Assembly (NCBI RefSeq): GCF_006345805.1
Contig: NC_043018.1
Location: forward strand, 22,630,001-22,694,000
From: Octopus sinensis
Lineage: Eukaryota
DNA: 64,000 bases
Reading direction: 5' to 3'
Position 1 is the first letter of the stretch. Every line of letters starts with the position of its first letter. The notes beneath the pieces are model-generated. The model had not been told where the DNA came from. It saw only the letters and a program-made list of their open reading frames with translations, and ran no database searches. Below, in pieces: positions 15,849 to 62,862 of the stretch. The position numbers and the translations under genes are program-made.

Positions 15849-16143
15849 ATATATATATATACATATTGAGAGTAACTCTTAACTATTTCATGCTGAAGTT
15901 GTCCCCCTTCATACGATTTACTTTCTATTTTATTCAACAGAAACTCTCATTACAAGCTGGAATTGTATGCTTTATTCTTTTGTATCTGAAGGATCATTCT
16001 GTTGGTTGTTTTTTATTTCATAATGCTGAACAAATCTTTTATCATTTACTTGTTTCAGCCACTGGACTATGGCCATGCTGGGGCACCATGTTCATAAGTT
16101 CTGATGATCAAATTAATTTTCTCTTTTTTCTCATTGTAATCAG

Positions 16144-16174
<31 letters not shown>

Positions 16175-16624: not shown

Positions 16625-16930
16625 AGAGCACATGGCTTAGTGGTTAGGGCATTCGGCTCACGATTGTAAGGTCGTGAGTTCAATTCCCGGCGATGCGTTG
16701 TGTCCTTGAGCAAGACACTTTATTTCACATTGTTCCAGTCAACTCATCTGGCAAAAATGAGTTGTACTTATATTTCAAAGGGCCGGCCTTGTCACACTGG
16801 ATATCCCTGAGAACTACATTAAGGGTACACGTGTCTGTGGATTGCTCAGTCACTTGTAAGTTAATTTCACGAGCAAGCTGTTCCGTTGATCGTATCAGCT
16901 GGGACCCTCGTCGTCGTAACCGACAGAATG
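16625..16930 (+). mobile_element. tRNA-headed SINE with TGTGTCCTTGAGCAAGACACTT core; related copy at about 37940-38210
   Basis: TGGCTTAGTGGTTAGGG A box and GAGTTCAATTCC B box, followed by a conserved central motif. Confidence 0.6.
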
Positions 16931-17149
16931 CTCCTAATATATTGTATGTATTTGTATTTACACTTATTCCACTATTAAATATTCTACTTCATACATTTCC
17001 ATCCATCATCTTGCATGTTCAACTCACTGAGAAAAAAGATGCATTCAACCTTAGCCTATTTACTTACGACACTCATCCATGAATTTCTTACTTTAAGCAA
17101 AACAAAAAACAAATTTAATTTTATATTACAAATTGGAAATTCAGAAGGC

Positions 17150-17666
17150 CTGCCGTTACGTTCTGAGTTCAAATCCCGCCGAGGTCGACTTTGCCTTTCA
17201 TCCTTTCGGGATCGATAAATTAAGTACCAGTTACGCACTGGGGTCAATGTAATTGACTTAATCCGTTTGTTTGTCCCCTCTGTGTTTAGCCCCCTGTGGG
17301 TAGTAAAGAAATAGGTATTTCGTCTGCGGTTACGTTCTGAGTTCAAATTCCGCCGAGGTTGACTTTGCCTTTCATCCTTTCGAGGTCGATAAATTAAGTA
17401 CCAGTTACGCACTGAGGTCAATGTAATTGACTTAATCCGTTTGTTTGTCCCCTCTGTGTTTAGCCCCCTGTGGGTAGTAAAGAAATAGGTATTTCGTCTG
17501 CGGTTACGTTCTGAGTTCAAATTCCGCCGAGGTCGACTTTGCCTTTCATCCTTTCGGGGTCGATAAATTAAGTACCAGTTACGCACTGGGGTCGATGTAA
17601 TCGACTTAATCCGTTTGTCTGTCCCCTCTGTGTTTAGCCCCCTGTGGGTAGTAAAGAAATAGGTAT
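17150..17666 (+). repeat. Three tandem 174-bp units of the same SINE body
   Basis: Unit junctions AAGAAATA|GGTAT at 17314, 17488 and 17662. Confidence 0.85.
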
Positions 17667-18289
17667 GCTGGTGACTCCTCATGTCTATACAAGGAGTATT
17701 TTTCTTTAGGGCGCAGATGTGGTTGTGTGGCAAAAAGCTTGCTTCCCAACTACATGGTTTTAAGTTCAGTCCCACTGCGTGGCACCTTGGGTAAGTGTCT
17801 CCTGCTATAGCCTCAGGCCGACCAAAGCTTTGTGAGTAGATTTGATAGACGGAAACTGAAAGAAGCCCATCCTATATATATATGTGTGTGTGTGTGTATG
17901 TCTTTGTGACTGTGTTTGTACCCCATCACCACTTGAGAACCAGTGTTGGTGTGTTCACATCCCTGTAACTTAGCGGTTTGGCATAGAGACCAATAGAGTA
18001 AGTACCAGGCTTAACAAAAAAATAAGTACTATAGTCAATTCGTTTGACTAAATTAAATTCTTCAAGGCAGAGCACCAACATGGCCACAGTCTAATGACTG
18101 AATATTTTTTGTTGTTTTTGTAAAATCTCAGAAAATAATTAAAAATTCACATTTTTTATCAAATTATTTTGTTATATTTGTCTTTTTAAATATTTCACTA
18201 ACTTTTTGTTATAACTTGGTAAAAGGGTCCGTATTTTGCCAAATTTGTTCCCACAGTCTTCTTTATCCACAAACAGAATTGTAAACTTA

Positions 18290-19319: not shown

Positions 19320-20412
19320 TTAAATGGTGCTGTTAGTTTCCAATCTCCTGCATAAGAAATGGCCTGGCTGTTAAGTTATTCAATAGACCCAGAAGATTAT
19401 CACTTCACTTGGACACAAAACAGGTGAAGGTTAACAACAGGAAAGGCCTCCAACTGTAGAAAAACTCAACCACAACGTACTCTTGTCTGACTCATAGAAG
19501 CATGCAAAAGATATTAACACAATGATGATGATATATACACACACGTATACAGATAAGATATGGCCTGGCTGTTAAGTTATTCAATAGACCCAGAAGATTA
19601 TCACTTCACTTGGAAACAAAACAGGTGAAGGTTAACAACAGGAAAGGCCTCTGGCTGTAGAAAAACTCAACCACAACATACTCTTGCCTGACTCATAGAA
19701 GCATGCAAAAGATATTAACACAATGATGATGATATATACACACAGGAGTGGCTGTGTGGTAAGTAGCTTGCTAACCAACCACATGGTTCCGGGTTCAGTC
19801 CCACTGCGTGGCATCTTGGGCAAGTGTCTTCTGCTATAGCCCCGGGCCGACCAATGCCTTGTGAGTGGATTTGGTAGACGGAAACTGAAAGAAGCCCGTC
19901 GTATATATGTATATGTGTGTGTTGTGTGTCTGTGTTTGTCCCCCTAGCATTGCTTGACAACCGATGCTGGTGTGTTTACATCCTTGTAACTTAGCGGTTC
20001 GGAAAAAGAGAACGATAGAATAAGTACTGGGCTTACAAAGAATAAGTCGCGGGGTCGAGTTGCTCGACTAAAGGCGGTGCTCCAGCATGGCTGCAGTCAA
20101 ATGACTGAAACAAATAAAAGAGTATACGTATACAGATACGCTAGCAGACATACCTGGCATTGCTTGGGATTGAAATGGCATAGTTTGTATACAGGTACAG
20201 TTAAGTTGAAACATGTGATAGGGAAAGTGAGGCACTGATGCCAAAACATTTGTGGAGTAAATGAAGGGCTAAGTTGGATCTCTACCTTTTGACCGACAGA
20301 TTTAAAAAATAATTTTTTGTAACTAAACACTTTCAAACTTCATATACTGTTTGTGTTTGTCCCCCCAACATCGCTTGACAACCGATGCTGGTGTGTTTAT
20401 GTCCCGTAACTT

Positions 20413-22155: not shown

Positions 22156-22391
22156 CTAGCAAAAACTGTCCGACGAACGGAAACGAGAACTCAGAGTAAC
22201 AGGTTTTGTTGAATTTTCTGCTGCTTTAAATAAGCATTTACTCTACTCTACCATGTTTGAGTACTCTTTTTTCCCTTGTTTCACATTTATGTGTTACTAC
22301 ACTCCGGTATATATAATATAGTAATAGTATATGTATATATATAATATATATAATATATATATATATATATATAATATATAGTATATATATC

Positions 22392-31639: not shown

Positions 31640-32770
31640 AAACTAACTCGTGAGGCTTCTTACTGTTTCAGCTACCAATGAAATTAATTGTGCGTGTGTG
31701 TATATGTTGATGTGTCCAGGTTTTATGTTTCTGTGTGAGAAAGTGTATGATGGTGTGTGGTGTGTGTACTGAGTTGAACAGTGTGTAGGTATGCTCGTAT
31801 AGTTGTATGTATGGTGTCGCTATTGAATTGTGTGTGGATAATGGTGTGTGGTGTGGGTGCAGAGAAGTGTTGAATGTTAGTGTGTGTAGAGTGGGAAGGT
31901 GTTTGTGGGTGTGGGTGTAATAGTGTGCGAAGTGAGTAATGAGTTAAACAGTGTGTATGAGTGTTTGTATAGTGGTGTGTGTGTGTGTGTGTGGTGAGAG
32001 TACCGAGGTAGGCAGTTTTCAGGTGTATAGGTGGAGGGGAATGGTGGTTGAGTGAGGGAGGTGTGTGGGAGTCTGTGTGGGGTTGGTATCAGATGAAGGG
32101 AGGTAGCTAGTTGAGCTCCTCGGGCAGAGACAGTCCGAACACAGACAGATGTTGTAGCGAATGACCGGTAGAGTCGGAATTTGCGCGAGACAGGGGTGTT
32201 ATCGCCGAGTCTGATGTCTCGGAGGTACTCTGCATACCGGTCAGCCAAGTGGCGTCCTGTTTGACCAATGTACAGGGAAGGACAGAGAGAGAGAGCAAGA
32301 GATGCAGTAAATAATATTACTGGAGGTGCAGGTAAAGGAGTTCGTGATGTGATATGGATGGTGGTGGGTGCCAGTGAGGATAATCGTGTTGGAGAGGTAG
32401 GAAAAGGTGCGAGAGCAAGGGAAGGAGCCAGGCTGAGAGGCAGCGGTAGGGAAAAAACTGTAGACTAGGAGGTCATACATGTTACGGGTTCATTTAAAGG
32501 AGGGAAGAGTTGAGTTAAGGAAAAAGTACAAGATGGAGGGGTCGGACTGGAGTCGCTGGAGGGCTCGGAGAATGGTGTGTTGGAGGTTAGAGTGGAGGAA
32601 TGGTAGGTGAATGGAAACGGGTATGGAGGGGCGGGTGCGAAGAGAAAGAGCAGAGGCACTGTCCACAGATCGTGCCCGGGCAAGGGCAGTGTGGATAATG
32701 ATGAGGGGATATCCACATAGCATGAAGTGGCGAGCCATGAGTTGAGACTGTGTCTCAAAGTCATGGTCGT
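31640..32770 (-). mobile_element. Penelope-like element remnant with GIY-YIG endonuclease
   Basis: Frameshifted translation FTCTSSNIIYCISC..CPSLYIGQTGRHLADRYAEYLRDIRLGDNTPVSR at about 32170-32350. Confidence 0.8.
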
Positions 32771-33307
32771 TTTATGAAAAGAAAAAGTTATCCATTTTTC
32801 TGGAAGTTATGAGGAAACAAATACGGGTCGGAGAGACGGGCATATATTGGGGCTAATCCACAACATTATGACCAGGGAAAAGCCGACGGCCACATGAAAA
32901 GAAAAAGTTTTATGAAAAGAAAAAGTTATCCATTTTTCTGGAAGTTATGAGGAAACAAATACGGGTCGGAGAGACGGGCATATATTGGGGCTAATCCACA
33001 ACATTATGACCAGGGAAAAGCCGACGGCCACATGAAAAGAAAAAGTTTTATGAAAAGAAAAAGTTATCCATTTTTCTGGAAGTTATGAGGAAACAAATAC
33101 GGGTCGGAGAGACGGGCATATATTGGGGCTAATCCACAACATTATGACCAGGGAAAAGCCGACGGCCACATGAAAAGAAAAAGTTTTATGAAAAGAAAAA
33201 GTTATCCATTTTTCTGGAAGTTATGAGGAAACAAATACGGGTCGGAGAGACGGGCATATATTGGGGCTAATCCACAACATTATGACCAGGGAAAAGCCGA
33301 CGGCCAC
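32770..33307. repeat. 138-bp tandem repeat, about 4 near-identical copies
   Basis: The TTATCCATTTTTCTGGAAG anchor recurs at a 138-bp period (TCC at 32791, 32929, 33067 and 33205). Confidence 0.9.
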
Positions 33308-33625
33308 GTAATCCGTGTTGTCGTTTATTTCCAGATCATTTGCAGCCGACCAAAACTGTATTGAAAAGCTTTTCCGTCATGACACTCCTGACTTTTGTAG
33401 ATCAGGAAATACTGTCCAATGTATATCTATGAATATTACGAACTGTTAAACAATATAGTCTTTATTTTAGGTGGTAAAGTGTGAGTTGTGGGAATTTTGA
33501 AAGTTGTTTTACGACGCACATTGGACGACCTTGAATGATCCTCTCTTTGCTTCTCATACCTTCCCACTCCTTTTATTTCTCTTTCCCTCCCCGTTCCTCT
33601 CTCTCCTCTCTCTCTCTCTCGCTCA

Positions 33626-33661
<36 letters not shown>

Positions 33662-33677
33662 CCCTCTTTTCCTCTTT

Positions 33678-33777
33678 NNNNNNNNNNNNNNNNNNNNNNN
33701 NNNNNNNNNNNNNNNNNNNNNNNNNNNNNNNNNNNNNNNNNNNNNNNNNNNNNNNNNNNNNNNNNNNNNNNNNNNNN
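33678..33777. other. Assembly gap (100 N)
   Basis: Run of N directly after a (CT)n tract. Confidence 0.99.
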
Positions 33778-34451
33778 ACGCCTGCACCTATTCAACAAAG
33801 ATCCAGATTCCTTTCCCAGATCTGAAGATCTGACCTAAATTACCAAAAAATTGAATATTGACTTTTATCAGATACTTTGTATATTTAATAATAATATAAT
33901 AATAATAATGAAATTATTGTATAGAGTGCCCATGTGCACCTGTCAACTTGTCAAAAGTGTGTATAAAGCATGTACATCATCATCATCGTTTAACGTCCGT
34001 TCTCCATGCTAGCATGGGTCGGACGGTTCGACCGGGGATCTGGGAAGCCAGAAGGCTGCACCAGGCTCCAGTCTTATCTGGCAATGTTCCTACAGCTGGA
34101 TGCCCTTCCTAACGCCAACCACTCCGTGAGTGTAGTGGGTGCTTTTTACGTGCCACCTGCACAGGTGCCAGGCAAGGCTGGCAACGGCCACGGTCGGATT
34201 GGTGCATTTTACGTGCCACCGGCACGGAAGCCAGTCGAGGCGGCACTGGCATCGGCCACGATTCGCTGGCATCGGCAGTAATGTACAAATGTCTGGGAAG
34301 TGAACAGTGTATGAGTCAGATACATGCTTGCATGTGTATGAAGGGGAGAAAATCAGATGTAGTGTTGGCAAGATTCTTACCACACAGGTACAATACTATT
34401 CAAATTCTTCCATTTCTTTTTCAACCTTTCTTCTTCTTCTTTTATTTCCAG

Positions 34452-37015: not shown

Positions 37016-37640
37016 CATATAACAAACCCCTACAGAAATCCTGTTCTGATATATAACAAATCCCTACAGATATCCTATGTTGATATATAACAAACCCCTA
37101 AAGAGATCCTATGTCAATATATAACAAACCCCTAAAGAGATCCTATGTTGATATATAACAAACCCCTAAAGAGATCCTATGTTGATATATAACAAACCCC
37201 TAAAGAGATCCTATCTTGATATATAACAAACCCTAAAGAGATCCTATCTTGATATATAACAAACCCCTACAGAGATCCTATGTTGATATATAACAAACCC
37301 CTAAAGAGATCCTATGTTGATATATAACAAACCTCTAAAATGATCCTATGTTGATATATAACAAACCCCTAAAGAGATCCTATGTTGATATATAACAAAC
37401 CCCTAAAGAGATCCTATGTTGATATATAACAAACGCCTACAAGATCTTATGTCTATATAACAAACCCCTACAGAGATCCTATGTTGATATATAACAAACC
37501 CCTACAGAGATCCTATTTTGATATATGACAAATCCCTAAAGAGATCCTATGTCAATATATGACAAACTCCTACAGAGCTCCTATGTCAATATATGACAAA
37601 TCCCTAAAGAGATCCTATGTTGATACATAACAAACCCCTT
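37016..37640. repeat. 34-bp minisatellite, about 18 copies, in the last tetraspanin intron
   Basis: GATATATAACAAACCCCTAAAGAGATCCTATGTT repeated. Confidence 0.9.
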
Positions 37641-38782: not shown

Positions 38783-39416
38783 CTATATATATATCTATAT
38801 ATATATAATTTTATCATGCCCTGTCACTGACTGGTGATAACTTTTGTGATGCCTTCCCTCCAGAATTAAGTGATCAGAGAGAGACAAATGAATACTCATC
38901 CAGCCAGCCAGCTAGCCAGCCATATATATATATATTATATATATATATATATATATAATAATAATAATATGAGGGAATATTATTCCAAACTTAGAGGGAA
39001 AAATTTAATTTAGAAATACTAAATCAAATTTCACAAAATATAATATATATATATATATTATATATATGGCTGGCTAGCTGGCTGGCTGGATGAGTATTCA
39101 TTTGTCTCTCTCTGATCACTTAATTCTGGAGGGAAGGCATCACAAAAGTTATCAACCAGTCAAGTGATAGGGCATGATAAAATAGGGCATGATAAAATTT
39201 ATTTAACTATTGATAATTCTTATTGAATGACAATTGTTTCGCAACTTAAAACATGTAGAGGTAATATATTATATTATGCTTTATAATAAGTAAATTACTT
39301 TATACACTCCTTATGATTTTCTCTTGCTTTATCCTGATCCATTAAGGAGCTTTTTGTATGAGTACCACCAACGGATTAGTTGTATCTATATATTGTGACT
39401 TAAATATATATACATA

Positions 39417-40563: not shown

Positions 40564-41102
40564 TGTATTCACCCTTGATGTTTACAACTTCTTCCAAACG
40601 TTCAACAACATTTTCAATACCTCCATTGATAGAAATCACCCAATTTCAACTCGAAAAATTGATGTAACCATGCTCTCAATTCTGCATCAGAATTGAACAA
40701 AACTCTGCGCATAGCATTTGAAAGAGATCAAAAGAGGTGGAAATCCGTAGGTGCCAAATCAGGAGAGTATGCCCTTGTGTGGCAGCACTTCCTAGCCATG
40801 CGGTTGAATGACTTCCTTGGTCATATTGGTGATATGAGGATGAGCGTTATCATGCAGCAGAAGAACTTCAAGCTAACAATTAGGTCTTTTCTCTTGAATA
40901 GCCATATTGAGTCGTTCCATCTGTTGAACATAGAGTTCCCCATTGACTGTTTGGTTCCCTTCAAGCAATTCATAATGGATAATCCCTTCCCAGTCCCACC
41001 ATGCGCACAAAATCGTTTTACGCAGATGAAGATCTTGCTTCACGTGCGGTATCGCTTGTTTACCAGGGTTAAGCCATTCCTTACGCTGCTTCACATTGAT
41101 GT

Positions 41103-41523
41103 TAGGACACCTACCATATTCTGAGCGCCTTGTTTCCCTGGGCATGGATTCACTGAAGCTCCGGTGTCTGGCGACGGACTTGGTAAACGCCCACAAAGTT
41201 GTCAACCACCTCACCAATAACAACACTGAACACCTTTTTGATCTCCATGTGTCTAACACACATGGACATGCCTACAAAGTCAGAAAACAACACAGCTCCC
41301 ATGACTTTCGGAAACATTTCTTCACGCTCAGAGTTGCTGAAGCATGGAATAAACTGCCTGCGTCAGTTGTTGACTGCCATGACACTGCATCCTTTAAGGC
41401 CCTCATGCTTTCCGAAATCCGTCGAAACTACACCTGATTATATATACACTTTAGATGAGTTGTAGTGCACCTGAGCACTGTACACAATGTTTATTATTAT
41501 TATTATTATTATATTATTAACAA
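41103..41523 (+). mobile_element. 5'-truncated CR1-type LINE 3' end inserted in the mariner
   Basis: ORF LKLRCLATDL...TRGH-like...FFTLRVAEAWNKLPASVV; (ATT)n tail. Related 3' fragments at about 34276-34390 (-) and 46040-46250 (+). Confidence 0.8.
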
Positions 41524-42189: not shown

Positions 42190-42825
42190 TTGGTGGATTC
42201 CTCCTTTTCGCCTTCGGCCCAGTGCGTCCATGCTGCCAACAAAGCACGCGGAATTCTGTTCTTGATTCGACGGTCATTCGGAATGCTCACAGCAGCCATA
42301 TTCCTACCACTCTATGTCACGCTGGTGAGACCCATATTGGAGTACGGGATTCAAGCCTCTTCTCCTTATCTCCTCAAAGACATACAGCATCTCGAAAGAG
42401 TCCAGAAGCTGGCTACCCGCATGGTTCATGGTCTCAAAAATTTGTCCTACGAAGAAAGGCTGAGGACGCTCGACCTTTATTCTCTTGAAAAACGTGGTGA
42501 TCTCAATCTCGCCCACAACATCATAAGCGGAAAGTGTAACCTCTCGAAAGAGCTGTTCTTCACTCCTGCTCCAGAGCGTTGGCTGCGGGGTCATTCCGAA
42601 AAGCTCTACCTGCGACGATTTCATCTCAATCGAAGGAGAGGAGCTTTCTCTGTCTGGGTTGCGGATCCGTGGAACAAGCTGCCAGACGAGATGGTGAAGA
42701 TGCCGACGACCGCTTGACCTCAAGTGGCCTGAACTCTTTACATGAACACCACCCTGTACTTAACTCCATGTCCCCCTACATGGCCTTGCTATTTGCTTTT
42801 GAGCCAAATTAACTAACTAACATAT
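42190..42825 (+). mobile_element. 5'-truncated CR1-type LINE 3' end (second family)
   Basis: ORF with LYVTLVRPILEYGIQASSPY, LERVQKLATRMV, LSYEERL and WNKLPDEMV; (AACT)n tail. Confidence 0.85.
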
Positions 42826-42976: not shown

Positions 42977-43065
42977 CATATATATGTGTGTGTCTCTGTG
43001 TGTAAAGAATCATTTAAAAAATTTTGTTTTTAGAAGCATTGACTGTGTTTCATATTATACAGCCA

Positions 43066-43906
43066 AAAAAGTAATATTTCGAGCATAGTATAGCTGTGAA
43101 AACAGCGGAAAGATTGGGTATTGCTACTTTTGTAAGATGGAAAAAGTTCTCAGCTGAAAGTCACAGGATTTGAACCTGCACTCCTCAGATACCGTTTAAT
43201 TTGATGGAGATTGTTGTCAGCAGGCAGTTCAGCTCAATGGTACAGTACTCAGCTGGTATGCGAGGGGTACTAGTTTGAGTCCCGTAGCTGTCTGCTGACA
43301 ACTTTGTAAGATGGAAAAAGTTCTCAGCTGAAAGTCACAGGATTTGAACCTGCACTCCTCAGATACCATTTAATTTGATGGAGATTGTTGTCAGGAGGCA
43401 GTTCAGCTCAATGGTACAGTACTCAGCTGGTATGCGAGGGGTACTAGTTTGAGTCCCGTAGCTGTCTGCTGACAATTTTGTAAGATTGAAAAAGTTCTCA
43501 GCTGAAAGTCACAGGATTTGAACCTGCACTCCTCAGATACCGTTTAATTTGATGGAGATTGTTGTCAGCAGGCAGTTCAGCTCAATGGTACAGTACTCAG
43601 CTGGTATGCGAGGGGTACTAGTTTGAGTCCCGTAGCTGTCTGCTGACAACTTTGTAAGATGGAAAAAGTTCTCAGCTGAAAGTCACAGGATTTGAACCTG
43701 CACTCCTCAGATACCGTTTAATTTGATGGAGATTGTTGTCAGCAGGCAGTTCAGCTCAATGGTACAGTACTCAGCTGGTATGCGAGGGGTACTAGTTTGA
43801 GTCCCGTAGCTGTCTGCTGACAACTTTTACCATCTTATAAGGGTAAAACCCCAACCTTTCTGCTGTTTCCATGGCAGCTATACTGCATTTGAAATATTAC
43901 CTTTGT
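43066..43906. mobile_element. Foldback-like element: about 80-bp terminal inverted repeats enclosing 4 x 174-bp units, each with a tRNA-like sequence
   Basis: TIRs at about 43066-43147 and 43821-43906; units start at 43147, 43321, 43495 and 43669; tRNA-like cores at 43223-43293, 43397-43467, 43571-43641 and 43745-43815. Confidence 0.75.
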
Positions 43907-44186
43907 GTCAGTAAAATACAATTTATTTTTTCCAGCCATTTCTTCATGTTGAACCATTAATCCCTACATATTTTTCTTCTCCTTCCTCCTTTTTTTCATT
44001 CTCTGTCCTTTTTTTATACCTCTCAACTCTTTCTCTCAAACAGCACAGGCTTGAACCGTCAAAGACTTTTCCATTCTTCCCAAGTATTAAACTAATACAC
44101 CTGCTTGTTGTTCCTTCACCTGTCTTCATCTTTTGTTTTTTTTTGTTTTCTGTAAATTTGAATTTTATATATATATATATATATAT

Positions 44187-44217
<31 letters not shown>

Positions 44218-44325
44218 TATACTGGAGTAAACACATAAATGTGAAACAAGGTGGAAAAAAGAGTACTCAAATACCAGTGGTAGAGTAATATGCTTTATTT
44301 AAAGCAGCAGAAAATTCAACAAAAC

Positions 44326-44362
44326 CTGTTACTCTGAGTTTCCGTTGCCGTTCGTCGGACAG
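44326..44362 (-). ncRNA. Minimal hammerhead-like motif with CCGACGA core, inside a spacerless palindrome (44290-44452)
   Basis: CTGT-CCGACGA-A-CG GCAA CG-GAAAC-TCAGA-GTA-ACAG; plus-strand mirror at 44379-44416; degenerate half copy at 22166-22202. Confidence 0.55.
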
Positions 44363-44670
44363 TTTTTGCTAGCAAAAACTATCCGACGAACGGCAACGGG
44401 AAACTCTGAGTAACAGGTTTTGTTGAATTTTCTGCTGCTTTAAATAAAGTATATATATATATATATATATAATAATATGTTACAATTACTCAATAGTCAA
44501 GATAAAACTATGAGTTTCAGATGCCGAAGTGGAAATCCACAACACCATCTCTTCGGTTATCTGGCCATCTGAAAAACTTTTAATCTTAATTTATATAAGT
44601 AGCAGAATTATAAACACAGTAATTTCCCTTTATATAACGGTATTTTTTCATAGCATTTTTTCAGACGGCC

Positions 44671-44733
44671 AGATAACCGAAGAGATGGTGTTGTGGATTT
44701 CCACTTCGGCATCTGAAACTCAGAGTTTTATCT
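44671..44733 (+). ncRNA. Hammerhead-like motif with CCGAAGA core, inside an inverted repeat (44476-44757)
   Basis: AGATAA-CCGAAGA-GATG..CATC-T-GAAAC-TCAGA-GTT-TTATCT; stem I is 6 bp and perfect. Confidence 0.45.
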
Positions 44734-44866
44734 TGACTATTGAGTAATTGTAACATATTATTCTATAGATAAATTTCCTCTATTTACATAATATTGAGGT
44801 CTCTTTCTTCTTTTTGTTATCTTACCATTTTTACCAATATATATATATATATATATATATGTATAT

Positions 44867-46899: not shown

Positions 46900-47378
46900 T
46901 ATGGCTGGATGCCCTTCCAAAAGCCAGCCACCTTACGGAGTGGACTGAGTGCTTTTTATGTGGGACCAGCACCAGTGAGGTCTGCTTTCAAATTGTCTTT
47001 ACAGCTGGATGCCCTTCCTCACACCAACTACCTTACAGAGTGCTTTTTATGTGGCACCAGCACCAGTGAGGTCTACTTTGGAATGGGCATTACAGTTGGA
47101 TGCCCTTCCTCACACCAGCTACCTTACATAGTGCTTTTTATGAGGCACCAGCACCAGTGAGGCCTACTTTGAAATAGGCTTTACAGCTGGATGCCCTTCC
47201 TCACACCAACTACCTTACAGAGTGCTTTTTATGAGGCACCAGCACCAGTGAGGCCTACTTTGGAATAGGCTTTACAGCTGGATGTCCTTCCTCACACCAG
47301 CTACCTTACATAGTGCTTTTTATGTGGCACCAGCACCAGTGAGGCCTACTTTGGAATGGGCTTTACAGCTGGATGCTG
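46900..47378. repeat. 91-bp tandem repeat derived from the (GAT)n-tailed SINE
   Basis: The CTGGATG anchor recurs at 47005, 47096, 47187, 47278 and 47369. Confidence 0.85.
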
Positions 47379-47985: not shown

Positions 47986-48041
<56 letters not shown>

Positions 48042-48235
48042 GTAGGTCCCGGGTTGAGTCGGGTTAACCACAGTAAATAAGGTACTCAATACATAGCAGA
48101 GTAAATTAATTTATTTTATAGAAGGAGCTTCTACAGGACTAGAACTGTTTCATTCAAATGAAATCATCAGGAAGCTTCCTGATGATTTCATTTGAATGAA
48201 ACAGTTCTAGTCCTGTAGAAGCTCCTGCTATAAAA

Positions 48236-48283
<48 letters not shown>

Positions 48284-49186
48284 GGTCCCGGGTTGAGTCG
48301 GGGTTAACCACAGTAAATAAGGTACTCATACATAGCAGAGGAAATTAATTTATTTTATAGAAGGAGCTTCTACAGGACTAGAACTGTTTCATTCAATGAA
48401 ATCATCAGGAAGCTTCCTGATGATTTCATTTGAATGAAACAGTTCTAGTCCTGTAGAAGCTCCTGCTATAAAATAAAAATACATATATATATATATATAT
48501 AATATATATATATATATTTAGAAGAAATGAGGTACTCAGAAAATCGGATGGTTTATATTTACAGATATTTATTTGTATATTACAGTTTTTATATATATCA
48601 CATCACTTAGATCATTAGCGCTTTCTCCCATTCTAGTGGGGGTTTTCGAATCAAACTCAGTTCCTGTGTGAGGAGTTTTGACTATTTTATAGTGGACTAT
48701 TTTATAGAGTTTGTAGTGGTGGGGAGGAATAAGACATAGAGAGGAGTGAGGAGAGAGATAAGGAGAAGAGAAAGGTGTAGAGAGAATGTGAGATGTGGTG
48801 TGTGTGTGTTTTTGGATCTGGGATGAGTGCTAAAAAAAAGTATATATATATATACTCACCTCATATTATGTGCATTTATATATACATGTATGTGTGTGTG
48901 CATATATGTGTGTGTAATGTGATGCTTGTGTTTCCAAATTGTTAACTATATACTTTGATCTTAACTAAAACTCAAGTGGCCATTGAGATAAGAAGAACGT
49001 GAAGTTTTAAATTGTTAACAATTCAAAACTAGGCAATGCGAATTTTTGTAAGAGTGAAATTACAGGACACGTCCTGAACTTAATGGTTATACTTTACAGT
49101 TTCCGCAAGCGCCAAATCCCATAAGCTGAGGCAGCCGTAATGCAGGAAACGCCAATGTATATAAATATACGTGTGTGTGTGTGTGT

Positions 49187-50854: not shown

Positions 50855-51048
50855 ACGGGGTGGTCATGGCTGGGACGCTGTTGCCCATAAGGTCTTCTGA
50901 ATGAGGATTGAACTGAGATTGAACGGGACCGTGTTAGTAAGATTATAACGAAGGAAGTAAATCTTATCAAGGGAGATCATTCAGACGGCATATTATCATT
51001 TAATTGGTGACTGGAGTCACACGGTGCTTGATTAGGTTTGCGAGCATC

Positions 51049-51583
51049 ATGTTTGACAGATATCTCCATTCATTCCACACTTTTCCATCTCATTCCGTTC
51101 TTTCATCTTCTAATTATTATTGTTCTGTATCTTTATCATCGAGGAGCAAATCGAAACCTCGTCTGAATTTCTCGGTGCTTCTATCAACGGTTTTCTTCCT
51201 AGTATCTTCGTTGTCATCGTTTGCAGTGAGAGGAGCAGATGCGAGTGATGATGTTGAAGAATTATGCCAGCAATTAGGCCCTTGTAAATGCAGAATGGCC
51301 AACGAAACAGGTGAGATAAATCTGAAGAATGTTGCCTTCTTCAACGGTAAACCACGTTTCGTTATTGCTCTCAACCAGACCTTCTCCGTGGCCTACAACC
51401 CTTGCGTTGGATTTACGTTGGCACCGGGTCCTGATGTTTCCGATAAGTGCAAAGATGCAGCTGTGTGTGTCTTCAAAGTGTCCGACAAGAACTCTTCCTA
51501 CAGAAACAGGGGTCAGTCGAAGTCAGCCAAGTTCCAATTTGACCAAGAATCCAGCAAATTCTTCATAAGTTATACGTCTCCAG
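51049..51583 (+). CDS. Cation-dependent mannose-6-phosphate receptor / ATG27-like protein, exon 1 (signal region plus N-terminal MRH-like domain)
   Basis: ATG at 51049; hydrophobic signal (FSVLLSTVFFLVSSLSSFA); C..LGPCKC, YNPC..F and C.DAAVC motifs; N-glycosylation sequons NET, NQT, NSS; phase-1 GTAAAT donor. The start codon is less certain than the 3' boundary. Confidence 0.82.
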
Positions 51584-51704
51584 GTAAATACAAACCAACG
51601 TATATACATATTGCACACATAAACAGATATACATATTTCACGTCCAAACTCACATAAATGTGAATGTGTAAAGCTAGGATGATACATATATATTTGTGTA
51701 TGTG

Positions 51705-53950: not shown

Positions 53951-56781
53951 TCGCAGACTACAACATACATGTGATCAGAAAAGCACAAATTTCACAACTT
54001 GCAAAGTAAACACAGCAATGTCACTTAGCGCACTGCCAGCTCTCACTGGGCTTGCAACCATGTGCTGCCATCTGTTGGCACGCCATAGAACTAGTCCAGG
54101 AACTTTTTGATACCACCTCGTTTCCACAACAGAAGCAGAGGTAATTTATCCCCATTTAGATGTAGAAATTCTATTACAGGGGTTCTCAACCATTTCTTAT
54201 CTATGGACCCCTTTGATTACTATTTTATTCTGGTGGACCCCTATAACCATTTGATGTTTAAAAACTATTTTTCTAAAACCCTTTTCAAAATCCCTATTTT
54301 GTTTTCCTCACATTAATTTTTGTAGATTGAACCATGCAAAATGTTAGAGAAAGAAACCCAACTATTTCTAGTAATACATAACCAATACATACATCTAAAG
54401 CAGGGGCTGTCAACTATTTTCATCTATACTCTCTTTTACTCTTTTACTTGTTTCAGTCATTTGACTGCGGCCATGCTGGAGCATCGCCTTTAATCGAGCA
54501 ACTCGACCCCAGGACTTATTCTTTTGTAAGCCCAGTACTTATTCTATCGGTCTCTTTTGCCGAACCGCTAAGTAACGGGGACATAAACACACCAGCATCG
54601 GTTGTCAAGCAATGCTAGGGGGACAAACACAGACACACAAACACACACACACATATATATACATATATACGATGGGCTTCTTTCAGTTTCCGTCTACCAA
54701 ATCCACTCACAAGGCATTGGTCGGCCTGAGGCTATAGTAGAAGACACTTGACCAAGGTGCCACGCAGTGGGTCTGAACCCGGAACCATGTGATTGGTAGA
54801 CAAGCTACTTACCACACAGCCACTCAGACCCTTTTGATTACTATTTCATTCTGGTGGATCCCTAAAGCCATTTGATGTTTAAAAACTATTTTTCTAGAAA
54901 CTCCTTTCAGAATCCCTATTTTGTTTCTTACACATTAACTTTTGTAGGTTGAACTACGTAAAATGATAAAGAAAGATACCCAGCCATTTCTTGCAATACA
55001 TACATTTAAAGCAAAACTTTTTCAGGAGCCCTTAAATTACTATTGTGGATCCTCAGTTTACTATTTCGCTCTATGGATCCCCAAAAATCCTATACGGATC
55101 TTTAGGGGCCGTATGGACCCTGATCAAGAACCATTGTATTAGAACAAGCAATACTGTTGTAGTTACCATGAGAGAAACTCTCAGACCGGCTTTTTGGGGC
55201 AAAATGCACTCGTCATAAGCAAGAGTACATTTTGGCCCCTAAAGCTAATCTGAGAGTTTCACTCACGGTAACTATCACAGTATTGTTCAGCAAAGAAACA
55301 AATAGAAGAAACATTAGGCTTTAAGAAGAAATAGTCCTGGGGTCAATCCATTCGACTAGAATTCTTCAGTGTGGTGCCCCAGCATGGCCACATGTATCTT
55401 AAGTACCTTACTCTTACATATAGGAGTGGCTGTGTGGTAAGTAGCTTGCTTCCCAACCACATGGTTCCGGGTTCAGTCCCACTGCGTGACACCTTTGGCA
55501 AGTGTCTTCTGCTATAGCCCCGGGCCAACCAATGCCTTGTGAGTGGATTTGGTAGACGGAAACTGAAAGAAGCCTGTCGTATATATGTATATATATATAT
55601 ATGTGTGTGTGTTTGTGTGTCTGTGTTTGTCCCCCTAGCATTGCTTTACAACCGATGCTGGTGTGTTTACGTCCCCGTCACTTAGCGGTTCGGCAAAAGA
55701 GACCGATAGAATAAGTACTAGGCTTACAAAGAATAAGTCCTGGGGTCGATTTGCTCGACTAAAAGGCGGTGCTCCAGCATGGCCACAGTCAAATGACTGA
55801 AACGAGTAAAAGAGTATATGTAGTATGATGCACATATAAGCAGGTAGTCTCTTACGCACTCATACATGTATTTTTCTTACACACACACACACACAGAGTT
55901 GTGTCTGTTTTTGGTGTTTTTGCTTTTAAATAAGGTCACCTCCATATTGTATTGATATTACCTTACGTGACTGAACGTATTTCTTAAAGACGTGTGTGTA
56001 TGTGTGGTATGTGTGTATTTATCCAGTCTGTACGTGTGAACATGTTTGACAGATTAAATATGTATTTGAAAGTTGTTGTTCATTTTTACTTCTGTTTCGT
56101 CCTTGTTTACATGCATGTGTGTGTGTGTGTGTGTGTGTGTATTTAGCTTAAAGGTAGAGCACTCAGCTGTTGTGTTTGTGTACATACAGTATACACACAC
56201 ACACTTGCATATATGCATTGAAACACACACACACACACATTTTTAAAATTTCAGATCAGAGATTATATTTTCCCAGCTGTTTTGTTAATCTATAAGTCGC
56301 AGCTGGCCAATTTTATCATTATTATTATTATGACTTTATTATTATCATCATTATTGTTGTTGTTCTCATTAAGGTGGCAAGCTGGCAGAAGCATTGGTAC
56401 GCTGGGCAAAATGCTTAGTGGCATTTTCGTCCACCTTTATATTCTGAATTCAAATTCTGCCAAGATCAATTTGTCTTTCATTCTTTTTGAGATCAATGTA
56501 ATCAGCTTACTCCTCACCTAAAATTGCTGGCCTTGTGCCAAAATTTTAAACCATTATTATTATTATTATTATTATTAAGGGAGTGAACTGGCAGAATCAT
56601 TAGCACACCGGGCGAAATGCTTAGCAGTATTTCGTTTGCTACTACATTCTGAGTTCAATTTCGCTAGGGTTTGACTTTGCCTTTCATCCCTTTGGGGACG
56701 ATAAATTAAGTACCAGTGAAACACTTGGGTCGATGTACTTGACTAATCTCCTCCCCAAAATTTGTGCCTATAGCAGAAAGG

Positions 56782-59245: not shown

Positions 59246-60650
59246 CCTCCTTCTTCCCTTCTTTCCTGAGCGCCCAATAATACTTTTTGTTCCACATCTC
59301 GCGTTGTTGTCTTTTTGTTTTCTTGTTTGGATTAACATTATATATATATATATAATGTTATATCATCATCATTGTCTAACGTCTGCTTTCCATGCTAGCA
59401 TGGGTTGGACGATTTGGCTGAAGACTGGCCACCCAGGAGGCTGCACCAGGCTCCAATCTGGTCTGGCAAGGTCTCTACAGCTGGATGCCCTTCCTAACAC
59501 CAACCACTCCGAGAGTGTAATGGGTACTTTTTACATGCCACCAGCATGAGAGCCAGTCAGGAGGCATTGGCATCGACCACTTTCAGATGGTGCTTTTCAT
59601 GTGCCACCAGCATGGCAGCCATTCAGGCAGCACTGGCATCAACCACTTTCAGATGTTGCTTTTTACGTGTCCCTGACACCAGACAGAGGAAACAGGCATC
59701 AAACACATTCAGATGGTGCTTTTCATGTGTCACCAGCACGGGGGCTAGCTGGGGCACTGGCATCGACCACGTTTGCGATATTTATCATCATCATCATCAT
59801 CATCATCGTTTAATGTCTGTTCTCCATGCTAGCATGGGTTGGACGGTTCGACCGGGGATCTGGGAAGCCAGAAGGCTGCACCAGGCTCCAGTCTTATCTG
59901 GCAGTATTTCTACAGCTGGATGCCCTTCCTAACGCCAACCACTCTGTGAGTGTAGTGGGTGCTTTTTACGTGCCACCTGCACAGGTGCCAGGCAAGGCTG
60001 GCAACGGCCACGGTCGGATTGGTGTATTTTATGTGCCACCGGCATGGAAGCCAGACAAGGCGGTGCTGGCATCGGCCACGAGTCGGATAGTGCTTTTTAC
60101 ATACCACCAGACCAGGGATCCTGGCTGGTTCAAACCCATGGCCTCAGTCCACTTATGCATACCTTTCCTTCTTGGGACACAAAACTCTACTTGTGAAGAC
60201 CTGTTGAGGCAAATCAAAATCAAAATCAAAAATCAAAATCGATCAACATCAATGGAAATTGTAGCTGTGATACCAGTGCCGGTGGCACATAAGAGAACCA
60301 TCCGAACGTGGCCGTTGCCAGTGCCGCCCCACTGGCTTCCGTGCCGGTGGCATGTAAAAAGCACCATCCGCTCATGGCCGTTTGCCAGCCTCGTCTGGCA
60401 CCTGTGCCGGTGGCACATAAAAAGCACCCACTACACTCATGGAGTGGTTGGCGTTAGGAAGGGCATCCAGCCGTAGAAACATTGCCAGATCGGACTGGAC
60501 CTGGTGCAGCCTTCTGGCTTCCCAGACCCCAGTTGCACCGTCCAACCCATGCCAGCATGGAAAGTGGACGCTAAACTACGACGATGATGATGATGATGAT
60601 GATGATATTTATTTATTTATTCATTCTTTTTAATATTTGTTTCCTTTCAG

Positions 60651-60863
60651 ATCAACTGTTCAAAACTCATGTGTACCTCCAGTGCAGCCCCGTCGACCAA
60701 CTGAGTGTGATCAAGTCCCGAGAAGCTAACCAATCCCTCTCACTGTTACTGCAGTCTGTCTGTGCATGCCCAGGGGGCTGCACCACACCTCACAATTCCT
60801 TCAGTCCTGGATCCTACATAGTCATCGTGTTCTTCTCAATTTTATTCATATACCTTTCTTTAG
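60651..60863 (+). CDS. CD-M6PR/ATG27-like protein, exon 2 (end of luminal domain, CACP motif, transmembrane helix)
   Basis: TTTCAG acceptor, phase 1/1, GTAAGC donor; QLFKTHVYLQC...LLLQSVCACPGGC...GSYIVIVFFSILFIYLSLG. Confidence 0.88.
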
Positions 60864-61777
60864 GTAAGCAGCCTCTCATTGCTGATATTAGTAGGGACTA
60901 CTATACATACATAAATACATACACACACACACACACACATAAATATATCTGTATATACATACATATATCTATCTGGCTTCCGTGCCAGTGGCACGTAAAA
61001 AGCACCATCTGATTCGTGGCCGTTGCCAGCCTCGCCTGGCACCTGTGCAGGTGGCACGTAAAAAGCACCCACTACACTCATGGAGTGGTTGGCATTAGGA
61101 AGGGCATCCAGCCGTAGAAACATTGCCAGATCAGACTGGACCTGGTGCCGCCTTCTGGCTTCCCAGACCCCAGTTGCACCGTCCAACCCATGCCAGCATG
61201 GAAAGCGGACGCTAAACGATGATGATGATGATTATATATATATACACACATATATATAGTATCTTTCTATCTATGTATATATATATATATATATATATAA
61301 CATCCAGCTGTAGAAACTTTGTGTAGAATCTTTGCCAGATCAGATTATATATACAGCAGGCTTCTTTCAGTTTCCATCTACCAAATCCACCGTCGCTTGA
61401 CAATCAATGCTGGTGTGTTTATGTCCCCATAACTTAACAGTTTGGCAGAAGAGACCAAAAGAATAAGTACTGGGGTTACAACGAATAAATCCTGGGGTTG
61501 ATTTTTTCAACTAAAGCCCTTTAAGGTGGTGCTCCAGCATGGCCACAGTTAAATGACTGAAGCAAGAAAAAGAATAAAAGAATATATATAATTGGTGCAG
61601 GCATGACTGTGTGGTAAGAAGCTTGGCTCCCAACTACATGGATCCAGGTTCAAGCCTCAAACCAACCGAAGCCCTCCGAGTGGATTTTGGTAGACAGAAA
61701 CTGAAAGAAGCCCGTCGTACATACATACATACATACATACATACATACATACACACATACATACACACATACATACA

Positions 61778-61809: not shown

Positions 61810-62342
61810 CATACATACATACATACATACATACATACATACATACACACATACATACATACACACATACATACATACATACATTCATTCATTCATTCAT
61901 TCATTCATTCATTCATTTCTATATTTAAGAGATGAGGAATTATGTACGTTATTTACATTTGACGGATATTTGTCGTCATCTTGTTTGTTGTTAACACAAC
62001 ATTTCGGCTGATATACCTTCCAGCCTTCATCAGGTGTCTTGGGGAAATTTCGAACCTGGGTTCTCATTATTTGATGTTATCATTATTATTATTGTTATTA
62101 TTATTATTTAGGTCACTACCTGGAATCGAACTCAGAATCTTGGGGTTAATAGCCCGCGCTCTTAACCACTACTCCATATGCCCAAAGGCATATGGCATAG
62201 TAGTTAAGAGCACGGGCTACTAACCCCAAGACTCCAAGTTCAATTCCAGGTAGTGACCTGAATAATAATAATAATAATTGATGATAATAATAACATCAAA
62301 AAATACCTTAGGAATGAGAACCCTGGTTCGAAATTTCCCCAA

Positions 62343-62388
62343 GACACCTGATGAAGGCTGGAGGGTATATCAGCCGAAACGTTGTGTT
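62343..62388 (+). ncRNA. Minimal type I hammerhead-ribozyme-like motif (Penelope-type)
   Basis: GACAC-CTGATGA-A-GGCTG..CAGCC-GAAAC-GTT-GTGTT: stem I, core, stem II and palindromic AACGTT stem III. Mirror copy on the minus strand at 61993-62038 has GAAAT. Confidence 0.65.
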
Positions 62389-62862
62389 AACAACAATCAA
62401 GATGAGGATAAATATCCATCAAATGTAAACAATGTATATATAAATAAACACACATGTATATATATGTATAAATATATACATATATATACATGTGTCTGTA
62501 TTTGTACCCCACCACCATCATTTGACAACCAATGTTGGTGTGTTTGCATCCCCATAATTTACAGTTTGCCAAAAGAGACCCATAGAATAAGTACAGCCTT
62601 ACAAAGAATAAGTCCTGGGGTCAGTTTGTTTGACTAAAGGCAGTGCTCCAGCATGGCCGCAGTCAAATGACTGAAACAAGTAAAAGAATATATGCACACA
62701 CACACACATGCAGGTTAGTTTTGTGTGTATATGTGTAAGAGAATAATTGTGGGTATATATTTTCTCAATGAACATATATAAACCTATTTTCTGAACTGTA
62801 TGTTTTAAATCCCTATTTTTTTTATCTTTCATCTTTTTTTTTTTTTGTTCTTCTATCTTCAG

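What the first reader, a model, noticed from the sequence alone, without database searches (positions are those of the whole stretch)
43066..43906. Foldback element containing four tandem tRNA-like units with a 17-bp extended acceptor stem
Seen: about 80-bp TIRs enclose 4 x 174-bp near-identical units. Each unit has GGCAGTT-CAGCTCAATGGTACAGTA-CTCAG CTGGTAT GCGAG-GGGT-ACTAG TTTGAGT CCCGT-AGCTGTC. The 7-bp acceptor stem is extended by a flanking 10-bp inverted repeat (GTTGTCAGCA/TGCTGACAAC; 43213-43302). Each unit also has an opposite-strand T-arm, GCAGG-TTCAAAT-CCTGT (about 43161-43177). The ATGCGAG.GGTAC segment resembles tRNA-Ala. Inference: a DNA-transposon-like vehicle amplifying convergent Pol III boxes, or a long-stemmed tRNA-like RNA. 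It fits neither a SINE nor a tRNA gene cluster.
Basis: partly seen in the sequence, partly recalled or inferred. Interest (0 to 1): 0.75.

Follow-up and report, generated by a model that had tools for sequence, protein, structure and literature searches.

The report
tRNA-derived foldback repeat, core amplified fourfold
This is an old inverted-repeat ("foldback", MITE-like) piece of repetitive DNA built around a decayed tRNA-like sequence, whose 174-bp middle was recently copied four times in a row; it is a fairly ordinary genomic fossil in a genome full of similar repeats, not a working tRNA gene cluster.

Summary
There are four 174-bp units that differ at 0-4 positions. Each holds a 71-nt tRNA-like segment inside a 90-nt hairpin with a 17-bp basal stem, and the array lies between inverted arms.

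Their inner 65 nt lie inside every unit. The "opposite-strand T arm" is therefore part of an inverted, 5'-truncated copy of the same tRNA-like sequence and its 3' flank.

tRNA ancestry is plausible:
- Rfam tRNA scores 24.7 bits, above the SINE heads tested in the same window but below the gathering score of 29.
- The forward 5' half joined to the left-arm 3' half restores a perfect anticodon stem and T arm.

The extant copies are not tRNA genes:
- ARAGORN finds nothing at default settings.
- The stable fold is a long hairpin, not a cloverleaf.
- The plus-strand B box is damaged, and the perfect minus-strand B box has no A box.

The array most likely arose by local unequal exchange or slippage at an ACTTT microhomology, not by transposition. 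Mobility is unproven: no second copy was found, and the only candidate target-site duplications (TSDs) are at chance level. The window also holds SINE-derived tandem arrays and a dozen other foldbacks. Interest is low to moderate.

The parts
43053..43918 (.). Whole foldback element: left outer arm, 4 x 174-bp array, right outer arm. A single-unit ancestor would be 344 bp.
   Evidence: Local alignment of the left side against the reverse complement of the right side. Single-strand DNA fold pairs the two ends, -141.5 kcal/mol, z=-7.5. Ancestor length computed.
43053..43128 (.). Left outer arm, the part of the inverted repeat that lies outside the tandem array.
   Evidence: Score 60 against 15.1+-2.4 in shuffles versus the reverse complement of 43828-43935. 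K2P 0.19 with three indels.
43129..43824 (+). Tandem array of four 174-bp units (43129, 43303, 43477, 43651), all in the same orientation.
   Evidence: TRF period 174, 4.0 copies, 98% matches, score 1370. Pairwise differences are 0-4 of 174.
43129..43193 (-). Inverted, 5'-truncated copy of the tRNA-like 3' half, trailer, T run and CCATCTTA. It forms the inner part of the left arm and repeats at +174, +348 and +522. It holds the T arm (43163-43179), a perfect B box GGTTCAAATCC (minus strand, starting at 43176) and a T5 run on the minus strand (A run 43141-43145).
   Evidence: Alignment to the reverse complement of the forward 3' half scores 27 against 12.2+-2.0, reached by 0 of 2000 shuffles. 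Motif positions. Also repeat finder pairs I1-I3.
43194..43212 (.). 19-nt spacer GTTTAATTTGATGGAGATT between the inverted half copy and the hairpin. It repeats in each unit.
   Evidence: Direct reading of the sequence.
43213..43302 (+). 90-nt hairpin: 10-nt leader GTTGTCAGCA, tRNA-like segment, 10-nt trailer TGCTGACAAC, with a 17-bp basal stem. It ends exactly at the unit junction. Further copies are at 43387-43476, 43561-43650 and 43735-43824.
   Evidence: RNA fold -45.3 kcal/mol, z=-6.4. Stem significance. Coordinates.
43223..43293 (+). tRNA-like segment, also at 43397-43467, 43571-43641 and 43745-43815. A box CAGCTCAATGG has 1 mismatch. B box AGTTTGAGTCC has 2 mismatches.
   Evidence: Rfam RF00005 at 24.7 bits against a gathering score of 29, E=0.02, full-length model match. 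Box scan.
43825..43918 (.). Right outer arm. It starts with TTTT (43825-43828), immediately after the last trailer.

Best explanation
This is a decayed, non-coding foldback (MITE-like) repeat whose core derives from a tRNA.

Ancestral form (inferred): about 344 bp. It consisted of a sequence S and, 19 bp upstream of it, an inverted copy of S that starts at the anticodon loop. S comprises a 10-nt leader, a tRNA-like 71-mer, a 10-nt trailer complementary to the leader, a T4-5 run, and about 90 bp of body. This arrangement gave two arms of about 141 nt.

Steps shown:
- The two arms have since diverged to 73% identity.
- Much later, the central 174 bp was duplicated head-to-tail to four copies that are 98-100% identical. 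The central 174 bp comprises the inner 65 nt of the left arm, the spacer and the 90-nt hairpin.

Step inferred: the duplication occurred by unequal exchange or replication slippage between two short ACTTT direct repeats 174 bp apart. The strong hairpin that abuts each unit junction probably favoured it.

The element encodes nothing, and its Pol III signals are relics.

Unresolved: I cannot tell whether the ancestral foldback moved as a MITE or arose as a local inverted duplication. Conditional on this reading, I put the MITE origin at about 0.55 and the local duplication at about 0.45.
For: Array and its youth.

Arms of 141/142 nt running into the units. The fold-back of the whole element.

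Junction microhomology: the left boundary is GCTAC|TTTTGTAAG, the unit junctions are GACAAC|TTTGTAAG, and the right boundary is GACAAC|TTTTACC. The hairpin ends at the junction.

tRNA ancestry:
- RF00005 gives a full-length match at 24.7 bits. In 12500-18000, which holds SINE heads, the best tRNA hit is 17.3 bits.
- Beyond the 17-bp stem, the 5' half is not a copy of the reverse-complemented 3' half (p=0.43). The A-box half is therefore independent sequence.
- The forward 5' half joined to the left-arm 3' half gives a perfect 5-bp anticodon stem (CTCAG/CTGAG) and a GCAGG/CCTGT T arm. ARAGORN calls this chimera at -ps and -ps90. At those settings the real window gives 0 calls, and shuffled windows give about 1.15 per 64 kb.

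Not a working gene.

Context:
- The same window has a SINE insertion with a perfect 15-bp TSD whose internal 190 bp is amplified 8-fold at a GGTAT microhomology, plus a second SINE-derived array.
- At least 12 other foldbacks have arms of 80 nt or more.
- One palindromic family has a second copy 22 kb away.
- A mariner transposase relic lies 2 kb upstream.

Published parallels: tandem-repeat-containing MITEs with a palindrome at the unit junction (PMC3879986), and the foldback element Tetris (PMC4079207).
Against: Only one copy could be examined.
- Nothing related was found elsewhere in the window apart from a 33-nt tRNA-5'-half-like fragment.
- Nothing was found in the metagenome or viral collections.
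- Nothing was found in protein space.

The available collections hold almost no DNA of this organism, so termini, TSD and mobility remain unproven. The only flanking direct repeats are TA/TA and a 5-bp ATACA, both at chance level.

Arm identity is only 73%, against 88-100% in the young foldbacks nearby. Either the element is very old or its arms were never identical.

The tRNA score is below Rfam's threshold, and the 7-bp acceptor stem comes free with any palindrome.
Confidence: 0.55

Rival explanations
1. Local inverted duplication that never moved. A tRNA-derived pseudogene or retro-copy and its 3' flank were copied in inverted orientation by a template switch or hairpin-mediated repair. The core then expanded in tandem.
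For: The window holds many inverted duplications. The arms of some include SINE copies plus flanking DNA at 89-96% identity, for example 54523-55730 and 7250-7575. That is higher than the 76-91% identity between dispersed copies of the same SINE families. No second copy of the arms was found, and no TSD exceeds chance.
Against: A single-unit size of 344 bp with long arms is typical of MITEs. Dispersed palindromic families do exist here. The absence of other copies in 64 kb says little in a genome of gigabase size.
Confidence: 0.3
2. Head-to-head pair of two retroposed copies of a tRNA-derived SINE. The right copy would be full-length and the left copy 5'-truncated at the anticodon loop. A tandem duplication across the junction followed.
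For: The orientation fits 5'-truncated retroposition: 3' ends point outward, and the left copy lacks the 5' half. S is about 185 nt, a typical SINE size. Head-to-head SINE pairs occur elsewhere in the window, at 12419/12762 and 54643/55426. A weak candidate TSD, GTTTCA/GTTTAA, flanks the left copy.
Against: S has no other copy in 64 kb, while the two common SINE families have about 10 and 20 loci. Two independent insertions landing 19 bp apart would therefore be very unlikely. Both arms carry a T4-T5 run directly after the trailer. From general knowledge, such a run is a Pol III terminator and would stop a transcript before the 90-nt body. There is no A-rich or simple-repeat tail, and no convincing separate TSDs.
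Confidence: 0.12
3. A functional non-coding RNA locus. The four hairpins would be transcribed by Pol III or by read-through and processed into small RNAs. Alternatively, the four perfect minus-strand B boxes would act as TFIIIC-binding (ETC-like) sites.
For: The hairpins are very stable, at z=-6.4. All 17 stem positions pair if G-U pairs are allowed. An A box with one mismatch is present. Four perfect B boxes lie 174 bp apart, each followed by a T5 run.
Against: Nothing reaches a gathering score in Rfam. None of six 18-21-nt strings from the hairpin arms occurs in the held supplementary files of the octopus miRNA study, which may be from a different species. The plus-strand B box is damaged, and the minus-strand B box has no A box. 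In unit 2 the leader substitution breaks one stem pair and the trailer substitution turns a G-C pair into G-T, with no compensating change. There are no conservation or expression data.
Confidence: 0.05
4. The tRNA resemblance is coincidental. The unit is simply a palindromic repeat whose stem mimics an acceptor stem.
For: The score is below Rfam's gathering threshold. ARAGORN calls the extant units only at -ps80, where shuffled windows give 17-34 calls. The MFE is a hairpin.
Against: The Rfam match is full-length and includes sequence-level matches in the D loop and T loop. The left arm holds a canonical GGTTCAAATCC T loop in a 5-bp stem. The chimera of the two arms restores the anticodon stem and passes ARAGORN at -ps90. 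The score is higher than anything found in the SINE-rich stretch tested for comparison.
Confidence: 0.1

Closest known systems
Tandem-repeat-containing MITEs of bivalve molluscs (pearl family; DTC84 of Donax trunculus; PMC3879986)
   Same: A short non-coding element with a central array of up to about five core repeats of roughly 150-170 bp. The array is flanked by sequences that hold inverted repeats, and a palindrome lies next to each unit junction as a likely hotspot for copy-number change. Here, four 174-bp units each end with a 90-nt hairpin at the junction.
   Different: DTC84 and pearl carry a microsatellite at one end of the array, only short inverted repeats, and a putative AA TSD. 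This element has no microsatellite and arms of about 141 nt that run into the units. Its unit is tRNA-derived, and no TSD or second copy was found.
Foldback transposons with internal tandem repeats (Tetris of Drosophila virilis, PMC4079207; FB and Galileo)
   Same: A foldback structure with long inverted arms and tandem repeats of about 200 bp, and no coding capacity.
   Different: In Tetris the repeats lie inside both TIRs and so form inverted arrays. Here all four units point the same way, and the array occupies the centre and straddles the arm/centre boundary.
SINE-derived tandem repeats (sSats of squamates, PMC10702118) and the SINE arrays in this same window
   Same: A tRNA-related short repeat amplified locally into a short head-to-tail array. 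Window examples are 12809-14326 and 17150-17666.
   Different: The window's SINE array is a plain retroposon insertion with a 15-bp TSD. The finding has inverted arms and no tail, and it belongs to no SINE family seen elsewhere in the window.
MITEs that captured a SINE module (MER6 with the V domain, PMC6887750)
   Same: A precedent for SINE-type sequence carried inside a Tc1/mariner-type MITE.
   Different: MER6 carries a SINE central domain, not the tRNA-related head, and has no tandem array. Membership of a Tc1/mariner family is untested here.

Membership tests
Functional tRNA gene | Reaches the curated score of a tRNA covariance model, or is called by a tRNA finder at default settings | tested here: not met
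   RF00005 scores 24.7 bits against a gathering score of 29. ARAGORN at default settings gives 0 genes in the window.
Functional tRNA gene | The cloverleaf is the favoured fold | tested here: not met
   The MFE of the 70-nt core is a hairpin at -23.7 kcal/mol, while the cloverleaf evaluates at -5.2. With leader and trailer the fold is -45.3 kcal/mol and is a hairpin.
Functional tRNA gene | Intact internal A and B boxes on the same strand | tested here: not met
   The A box has 1 mismatch. The + strand B box AGTTTGAGTCC has 2 mismatches. The perfect B box is on the other strand and has no 5' half.
tRNA-derived SINE | tRNA-related head | tested here: inconclusive
   The head is tRNA-like at 24.7 bits, more than anything found in 12500-18000, where the best tRNA hit is 17.3 bits. 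It is still below the curated threshold.
tRNA-derived SINE | A-rich or simple-repeat 3' tail, with a TSD of about 5-20 bp around one copy | tested here: not met
   The arms end in ...GTAAAATA and ...GTATAATA with no tail. Only 6-8-bp imperfect candidate TSDs were found, at chance level. By contrast, the SINE at 12762-14321 has a perfect 15-bp TSD.
tRNA-derived SINE | Many dispersed copies | not testable with these tools
   No other copy was found in the 64-kb window. No genome of this organism is in the searchable collections.
MITE / foldback DNA transposon | Terminal or subterminal inverted repeats, small size, no coding capacity | tested here: met
   Arms are 141/142 nt at 73% identity. The element is 866 bp, or 344 bp with one unit. 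The longest ORFs are 46 aa with a start codon, or 49 aa stop-to-stop, and have no homologues.
MITE / foldback DNA transposon | TSD of fixed length or sequence at the termini | tested here: inconclusive
   TA|CAGCC...GTCAG|TA is possible. The 5-bp ATACA repeat is at about the number expected by chance across the boundary pairs tried, and the 2-bp TA repeat carries even less weight.
MITE / foldback DNA transposon | Several copies sharing the same termini at unrelated sites | not testable with these tools
   
Tandem-repeat-containing MITEs (pearl/DTC84 type) | Central array of a few core repeats between flanks that bear inverted repeats | tested here: met
   compared with the description.
Tandem-repeat-containing MITEs (pearl/DTC84 type) | Microsatellite at one end of the array, and an AA TSD | tested here: not met
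   No microsatellite lies between the array and the arms. The flanks are ...TTTCA and CAATTT....
microRNA or other curated RNA family | Reaches a gathering score in Rfam | tested here: not met
   The best non-tRNA hits over the units score 15-24 bits against thresholds of 68-249.

The most novel reading that the evidence does not exclude
The array could be a young, TE-born RNA or chromatin element rather than junk. In one version, four tandem 90-nt hairpins derived from a tRNA gene are transcribed. They adopt the long-hairpin fold, with leader-trailer pairing, instead of the cloverleaf, and are diced into small RNAs. From memory, this is how the mouse tRNA-Ile-like mir-1983 precursor behaves. 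In the other version, the four perfect minus-strand B boxes at 174-bp spacing serve as a TFIIIC-binding (ETC-like) array.
Probability: 0.05. Interest if true: 0.6.

Novelty: new member of a known kind. Interest (0 to 1): 0.25.

Why it matters
The locus is a clean single-locus example of how a palindromic, tRNA-derived repeat can seed a tandem array. The old arms date the foldback and the near-identical units date the expansion. The junctions show the microhomology used, and a strong hairpin sits exactly at each junction. Together with the SINE arrays in the same window, this suggests that this genome readily turns tRNA-derived interspersed repeats into short satellite-like arrays. That is relevant to how satellites are born from mobile elements. 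It is not evidence for a new kind of gene or transposon.

Tried and rejected
1. Looking for other copies.
- Sensitive blastn of the unit, of both arms and of the whole element against the window found only a 33-nt fragment at 56142-56174.
- Exact look-ups of four ORFs in or overlapping the element found nothing.
- One protein search with nine stop-free translations of the element joined by X runs returned 1038 word candidates, none significant.

2. Orthologous locus. The neighbouring exon at 51.3-51.6 kb found only two Logan contigs of 1.0-1.3 kb at 92% identity. They are too short to reach the element.

3. A third-arm hypothesis, in which the 5' half of the tRNA-like segment is just the reverse complement of the 3' half. 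Rejected: beyond the 17-bp stem the similarity is at chance level, p=0.43.

4. ARAGORN at -ps80 as evidence for the extant units. Rejected: shuffled windows give 17-34 calls at that setting.

5. TSD search over all plausible boundaries found nothing above chance.

6. Comparison of termini with other foldbacks in the window found no shared termini.

7. Literature. No paper text holds the unit's sequence. The held supplements of the octopus miRNA paper do not hold the hairpin arms. The Octopus vulgaris repeat paper gives family counts only.

8. Taxon. The SINE sequences look like octopus SINEs from my memory. Searches for the run accessions and for the SINE strings did not confirm this.

Full report
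WHAT IS THERE

Tandem Repeats Finder reports an array at 43129-43827 with period 174, 4.0 copies, 98% matches and score 1370. Read in register, units 1 and 4 are identical. Unit 3 has one private substitution and unit 2 has three. These private differences argue against a simple assembly duplication.

Each unit contains a 71-nt stretch that Rfam's tRNA model (RF00005) aligns end to end, at 43223-43293 and then every 174 bp. The score is 24.7 bits and E=0.02 in a 1.4-kb search against all families, below the gathering score of 29. ARAGORN at default settings calls no tRNA anywhere in the 64-kb window.

It extends the 7-bp acceptor stem to 17 contiguous pairs. The alignment score is 25 against 10.7+-2.1 in shuffles, reached by 0 of 2000. 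The 90-nt segment folds at -45.3 kcal/mol, z=-6.4. The opposite-strand T arm is at 43163-43179.

THE ARMS ARE LONGER THAN REPORTED, AND THAT EXPLAINS THE UNIT

The inverted similarity does not stop at the edges of the array. A local alignment pairs 43053-43193 with the reverse complement of 43777-43918. The arms are 141/142 nt at 73% identity, K2P 0.26. The outer parts alone score 60 against 15.1+-2.4 in shuffles, and the next 100 bp outward score at chance level.

The inner 65 nt of each arm lie inside the repeat unit. On the right this stretch is the 3' half of the tRNA-like segment from the anticodon loop onward, followed by the trailer, a T run and CCATCTTA. On the left it is the reverse complement of a diverged copy of the same stretch (score 27 against 12.2+-2.0).

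Each 174-bp unit consists of an inverted 3' half, a 19-nt spacer and the 90-nt hairpin. The whole 866-nt element folds back with its ends paired at -141.5 kcal/mol, z=-7.5. With a single unit it would be 344 bp.

IS IT REALLY tRNA-DERIVED?

Probably yes, for four reasons.
- The Rfam match is full-length and includes sequence matches in the D and T loops. In a comparison stretch, 12500-18000, which holds SINE heads, the best tRNA hit is a partial match at 17.3 bits.
- Beyond the 17-bp stem, the 5' half is not a reverse-complement copy of the 3' half (p=0.43). The A-box half is therefore independent sequence, not a by-product of a palindrome.
- The two arms have kept complementary subsets of tRNA features. 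The left arm has a canonical T arm (GCAGG-TTCAAAT-CCTGT) and the strand CTGAG, which pairs perfectly with the forward CTCAG. The right arm has the better acceptor strand.
- A chimera of the forward 5' half and the left-arm 3' half is called a tRNA by ARAGORN at -ps and -ps90. At those settings the real window gives no call, and shuffled windows give about 1.15 calls per 64 kb.

ARAGORN's call on the extant units at -ps80 is worthless, because shuffled windows give 17-34 calls at that setting.

The isotype is open. The anticodon position reads GGT. From memory this does resemble animal tRNA-Ala(AGC), but I could not test it.

IT IS NOT A WORKING tRNA OR A WORKING POL III UNIT

The favoured fold of the extant sequence is a long hairpin. 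The 70-nt core folds at -23.7 kcal/mol, while the cloverleaf evaluates at -5.2.

On the plus strand the A box has one mismatch. The B box (AGTTTGAGTCC) has two mismatches, including the C of GTTC. The perfect B box GGTTCAAATCC is on the minus strand in the truncated copy, which has no A box.

Both arms carry T4-T5 directly after the trailer. From general knowledge of Pol III termination, such a run would stop a transcript before the 90-nt outer arm. That argues against the arm being the body of a Pol III-transcribed SINE.

Inside the array, the plus strand has a T4 run only at one of the three junctions (43476), created by the unit-2 substitution, and at the array's two edges (43128, 43825).

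HOW THE ARRAY AROSE

The left boundary reads GCTAC|TTTTGTAAGATGG. The unit junctions read GACAAC|TTTGTAAGATGG. The right boundary reads GACAAC|TTTTACCATC.

The first duplication therefore joined two ACTTT motifs 174 bp apart. This is the signature of slippage or unequal exchange at a microhomology. The 90-nt hairpin ends exactly at the junction.

The units differ at 0-2% of positions, while the arms differ at 27%. The expansion is therefore much younger than the foldback.

A palindrome at the unit junction as a hotspot for copy-number change is what was described for the tandem-repeat-containing MITE DTC84 (PMC3879986).

CONTEXT IN THE SAME WINDOW

The genome is packed with tRNA-derived SINEs. 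Two families have about 10 and 20 loci in the 64 kb.

One SINE insertion, with its head at 12762, has a perfect 15-bp TSD (GGTATACACCACGTG at 12745-12759 and 14322-14336). Its internal 190 bp is amplified 8-fold, with a GGTAT microhomology between the SINE and the TSD. A second array of the same family (3 x 174 bp) lies at 17150-17666. Local tandem amplification of tRNA-SINE-derived units is therefore common here.

Foldbacks are also common. At least a dozen non-microsatellite inverted repeats have arms of 80 nt or more and lie within 1 kb of each other. Two young ones sit immediately downstream of the finding, at 44288-44454 and 44459-44774, with arms 96% complementary. The first of these families has another copy at 22156-22233. 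A mariner transposase relic lies at 40873-41259.

MOBILE OR NOT?

This could not be settled.
- The arms have no other copy in the window.
- Scans of the metagenome and viral collections found nothing.
- Exact ORF look-ups found nothing.
- A protein-space search with all stop-free translations found nothing.

The collections clearly hold very little DNA of this organism. A neighbouring exon finds only two 1-kb Logan contigs at 92% identity.

The flanks allow TA|CAGCC...GTCAG|TA, which would fit a Tc1/mariner-type MITE. A 2-bp repeat carries almost no weight, however, and the 5-bp ATACA alternative is about what chance gives across the boundaries tried.

Against two independent SINE insertions: the sequence is rare locally, while the common SINEs are everywhere. 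A 19-bp spacing would therefore be a striking coincidence. There is also no tail and no separate TSD.

Overall I put about 0.55 on the foldback-relic reading. Within that reading I split about 0.55 MITE to 0.45 local duplication. As overlapping estimates rather than a partition, I put about 0.3 on a local, never-mobile inverted duplication, about 0.12 on a SINE pair, about 0.05 on a functional RNA or chromatin element, and about 0.1 that the tRNA likeness is coincidental.

COMPARISON WITH KNOWN ELEMENTS

The element works like the tandem-repeat-containing MITEs of bivalves (pearl, DTC84). It also resembles foldback elements with internal repeats such as Tetris, and SINE-derived satellites. MER6 is a precedent for SINE sequence carried inside a MITE.

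It differs from them in four ways:
- The unit is a tRNA-derived palindrome.
- The long arms reach into the units.
- All units share one orientation.
- There is no microsatellite module.

Membership of any named family could not be tested, because no repeat library or genome of the organism was available.

VERDICT

This is a new member of a known kind of repeat, in a genome where both of its ingredients are commonplace. Interest is 0.25.

Noticed in passing
window 12745-14336: One tRNA-derived SINE insertion, with its head at 12762, is flanked by a perfect 15-bp TSD (GGTATACACCACGTG at 12745-12759 and 14322-14336). Its internal 190 bp is amplified to 8 tandem copies (12809-14326), and the junction uses a GGTAT microhomology between the SINE and the TSD. 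An inverted copy of the same SINE lies just upstream, at 12419-12577.
   Followed up: partly
window 17150-17666: A second tandem array of the same SINE family, 3 x 174 bp at 96% matches. The period matches the finding's, but the sequence is unrelated.
   Followed up: partly
window 44288-44454 and 44459-44774: Two young foldback (palindromic, MITE-like) elements lie back to back, about 370 bp downstream of the finding. Their arms are about 83 nt (nested inverted pairs of 56 and 32 nt) and 118 nt, both 96% complementary. The first family has another copy at 22156-22233 (94-96% identity). The Rfam miRNA hits here (mir-9 at 50.8 bits, MIR1023 on both strands) are probably palindrome artefacts.
   Followed up: partly
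window, whole: At least a dozen other non-microsatellite inverted repeats have arms of 80-200 nt within 1 kb of each other. Examples are 4726-4909 (100% complementary), 38835-39154, 7250-7575, 54523-55730 and 61941-62440. Several have SINE copies inside their arms at higher identity than dispersed SINE copies show, which suggests frequent local inverted duplication.
   Followed up: partly
window 40873-41259 (-) and 42190-42717 (+): A mariner-type transposase fragment (Pfam PF01359, E=1.3e-22) lies 2 kb upstream of the finding. An ORF resembling the C-terminal region of a LINE reverse transcriptase lies just upstream; it had no Pfam hit.
   Followed up: partly
window 56142-56174: A 33-nt fragment, TAGCTTAAAGGTAGAGCACTCAGCTG..., is 79% identical to the 5' half of the unit's tRNA-like segment and has a more canonical D arm. 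It is embedded between (TG)n runs. It may be another relic of the same tRNA-derived family.
   Followed up: partly
window 32769-33307 and about 33436-33798: A 138-bp x 3.9 array at 100% identity lies next to a run of N, seen as an X run in an ORF translation. This may be an assembly gap or artefact.
   Followed up: no
window 2117-2602 (-) and 51004-51657 (+), 60584-61012 (+): Host gene exons. One is an acireductone dioxygenase (ARD, PF03079, E=8.7e-28) exon near the window start. The other is a cysteine-rich secreted or membrane protein exon at about 51.3-51.6 kb, whose only homologue found is a 195-aa Logan ORF at 92% identity (SRR11869385 and SRR11869391).
   Followed up: partly
window 37017-37639, 46947-47376, 48005-48521, 19352-19744: Further minisatellite or short tandem arrays: 34 bp x 18, 91 bp x 4.7, 238 bp x 2.2 and 201 bp x 2.
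   Followed up: no
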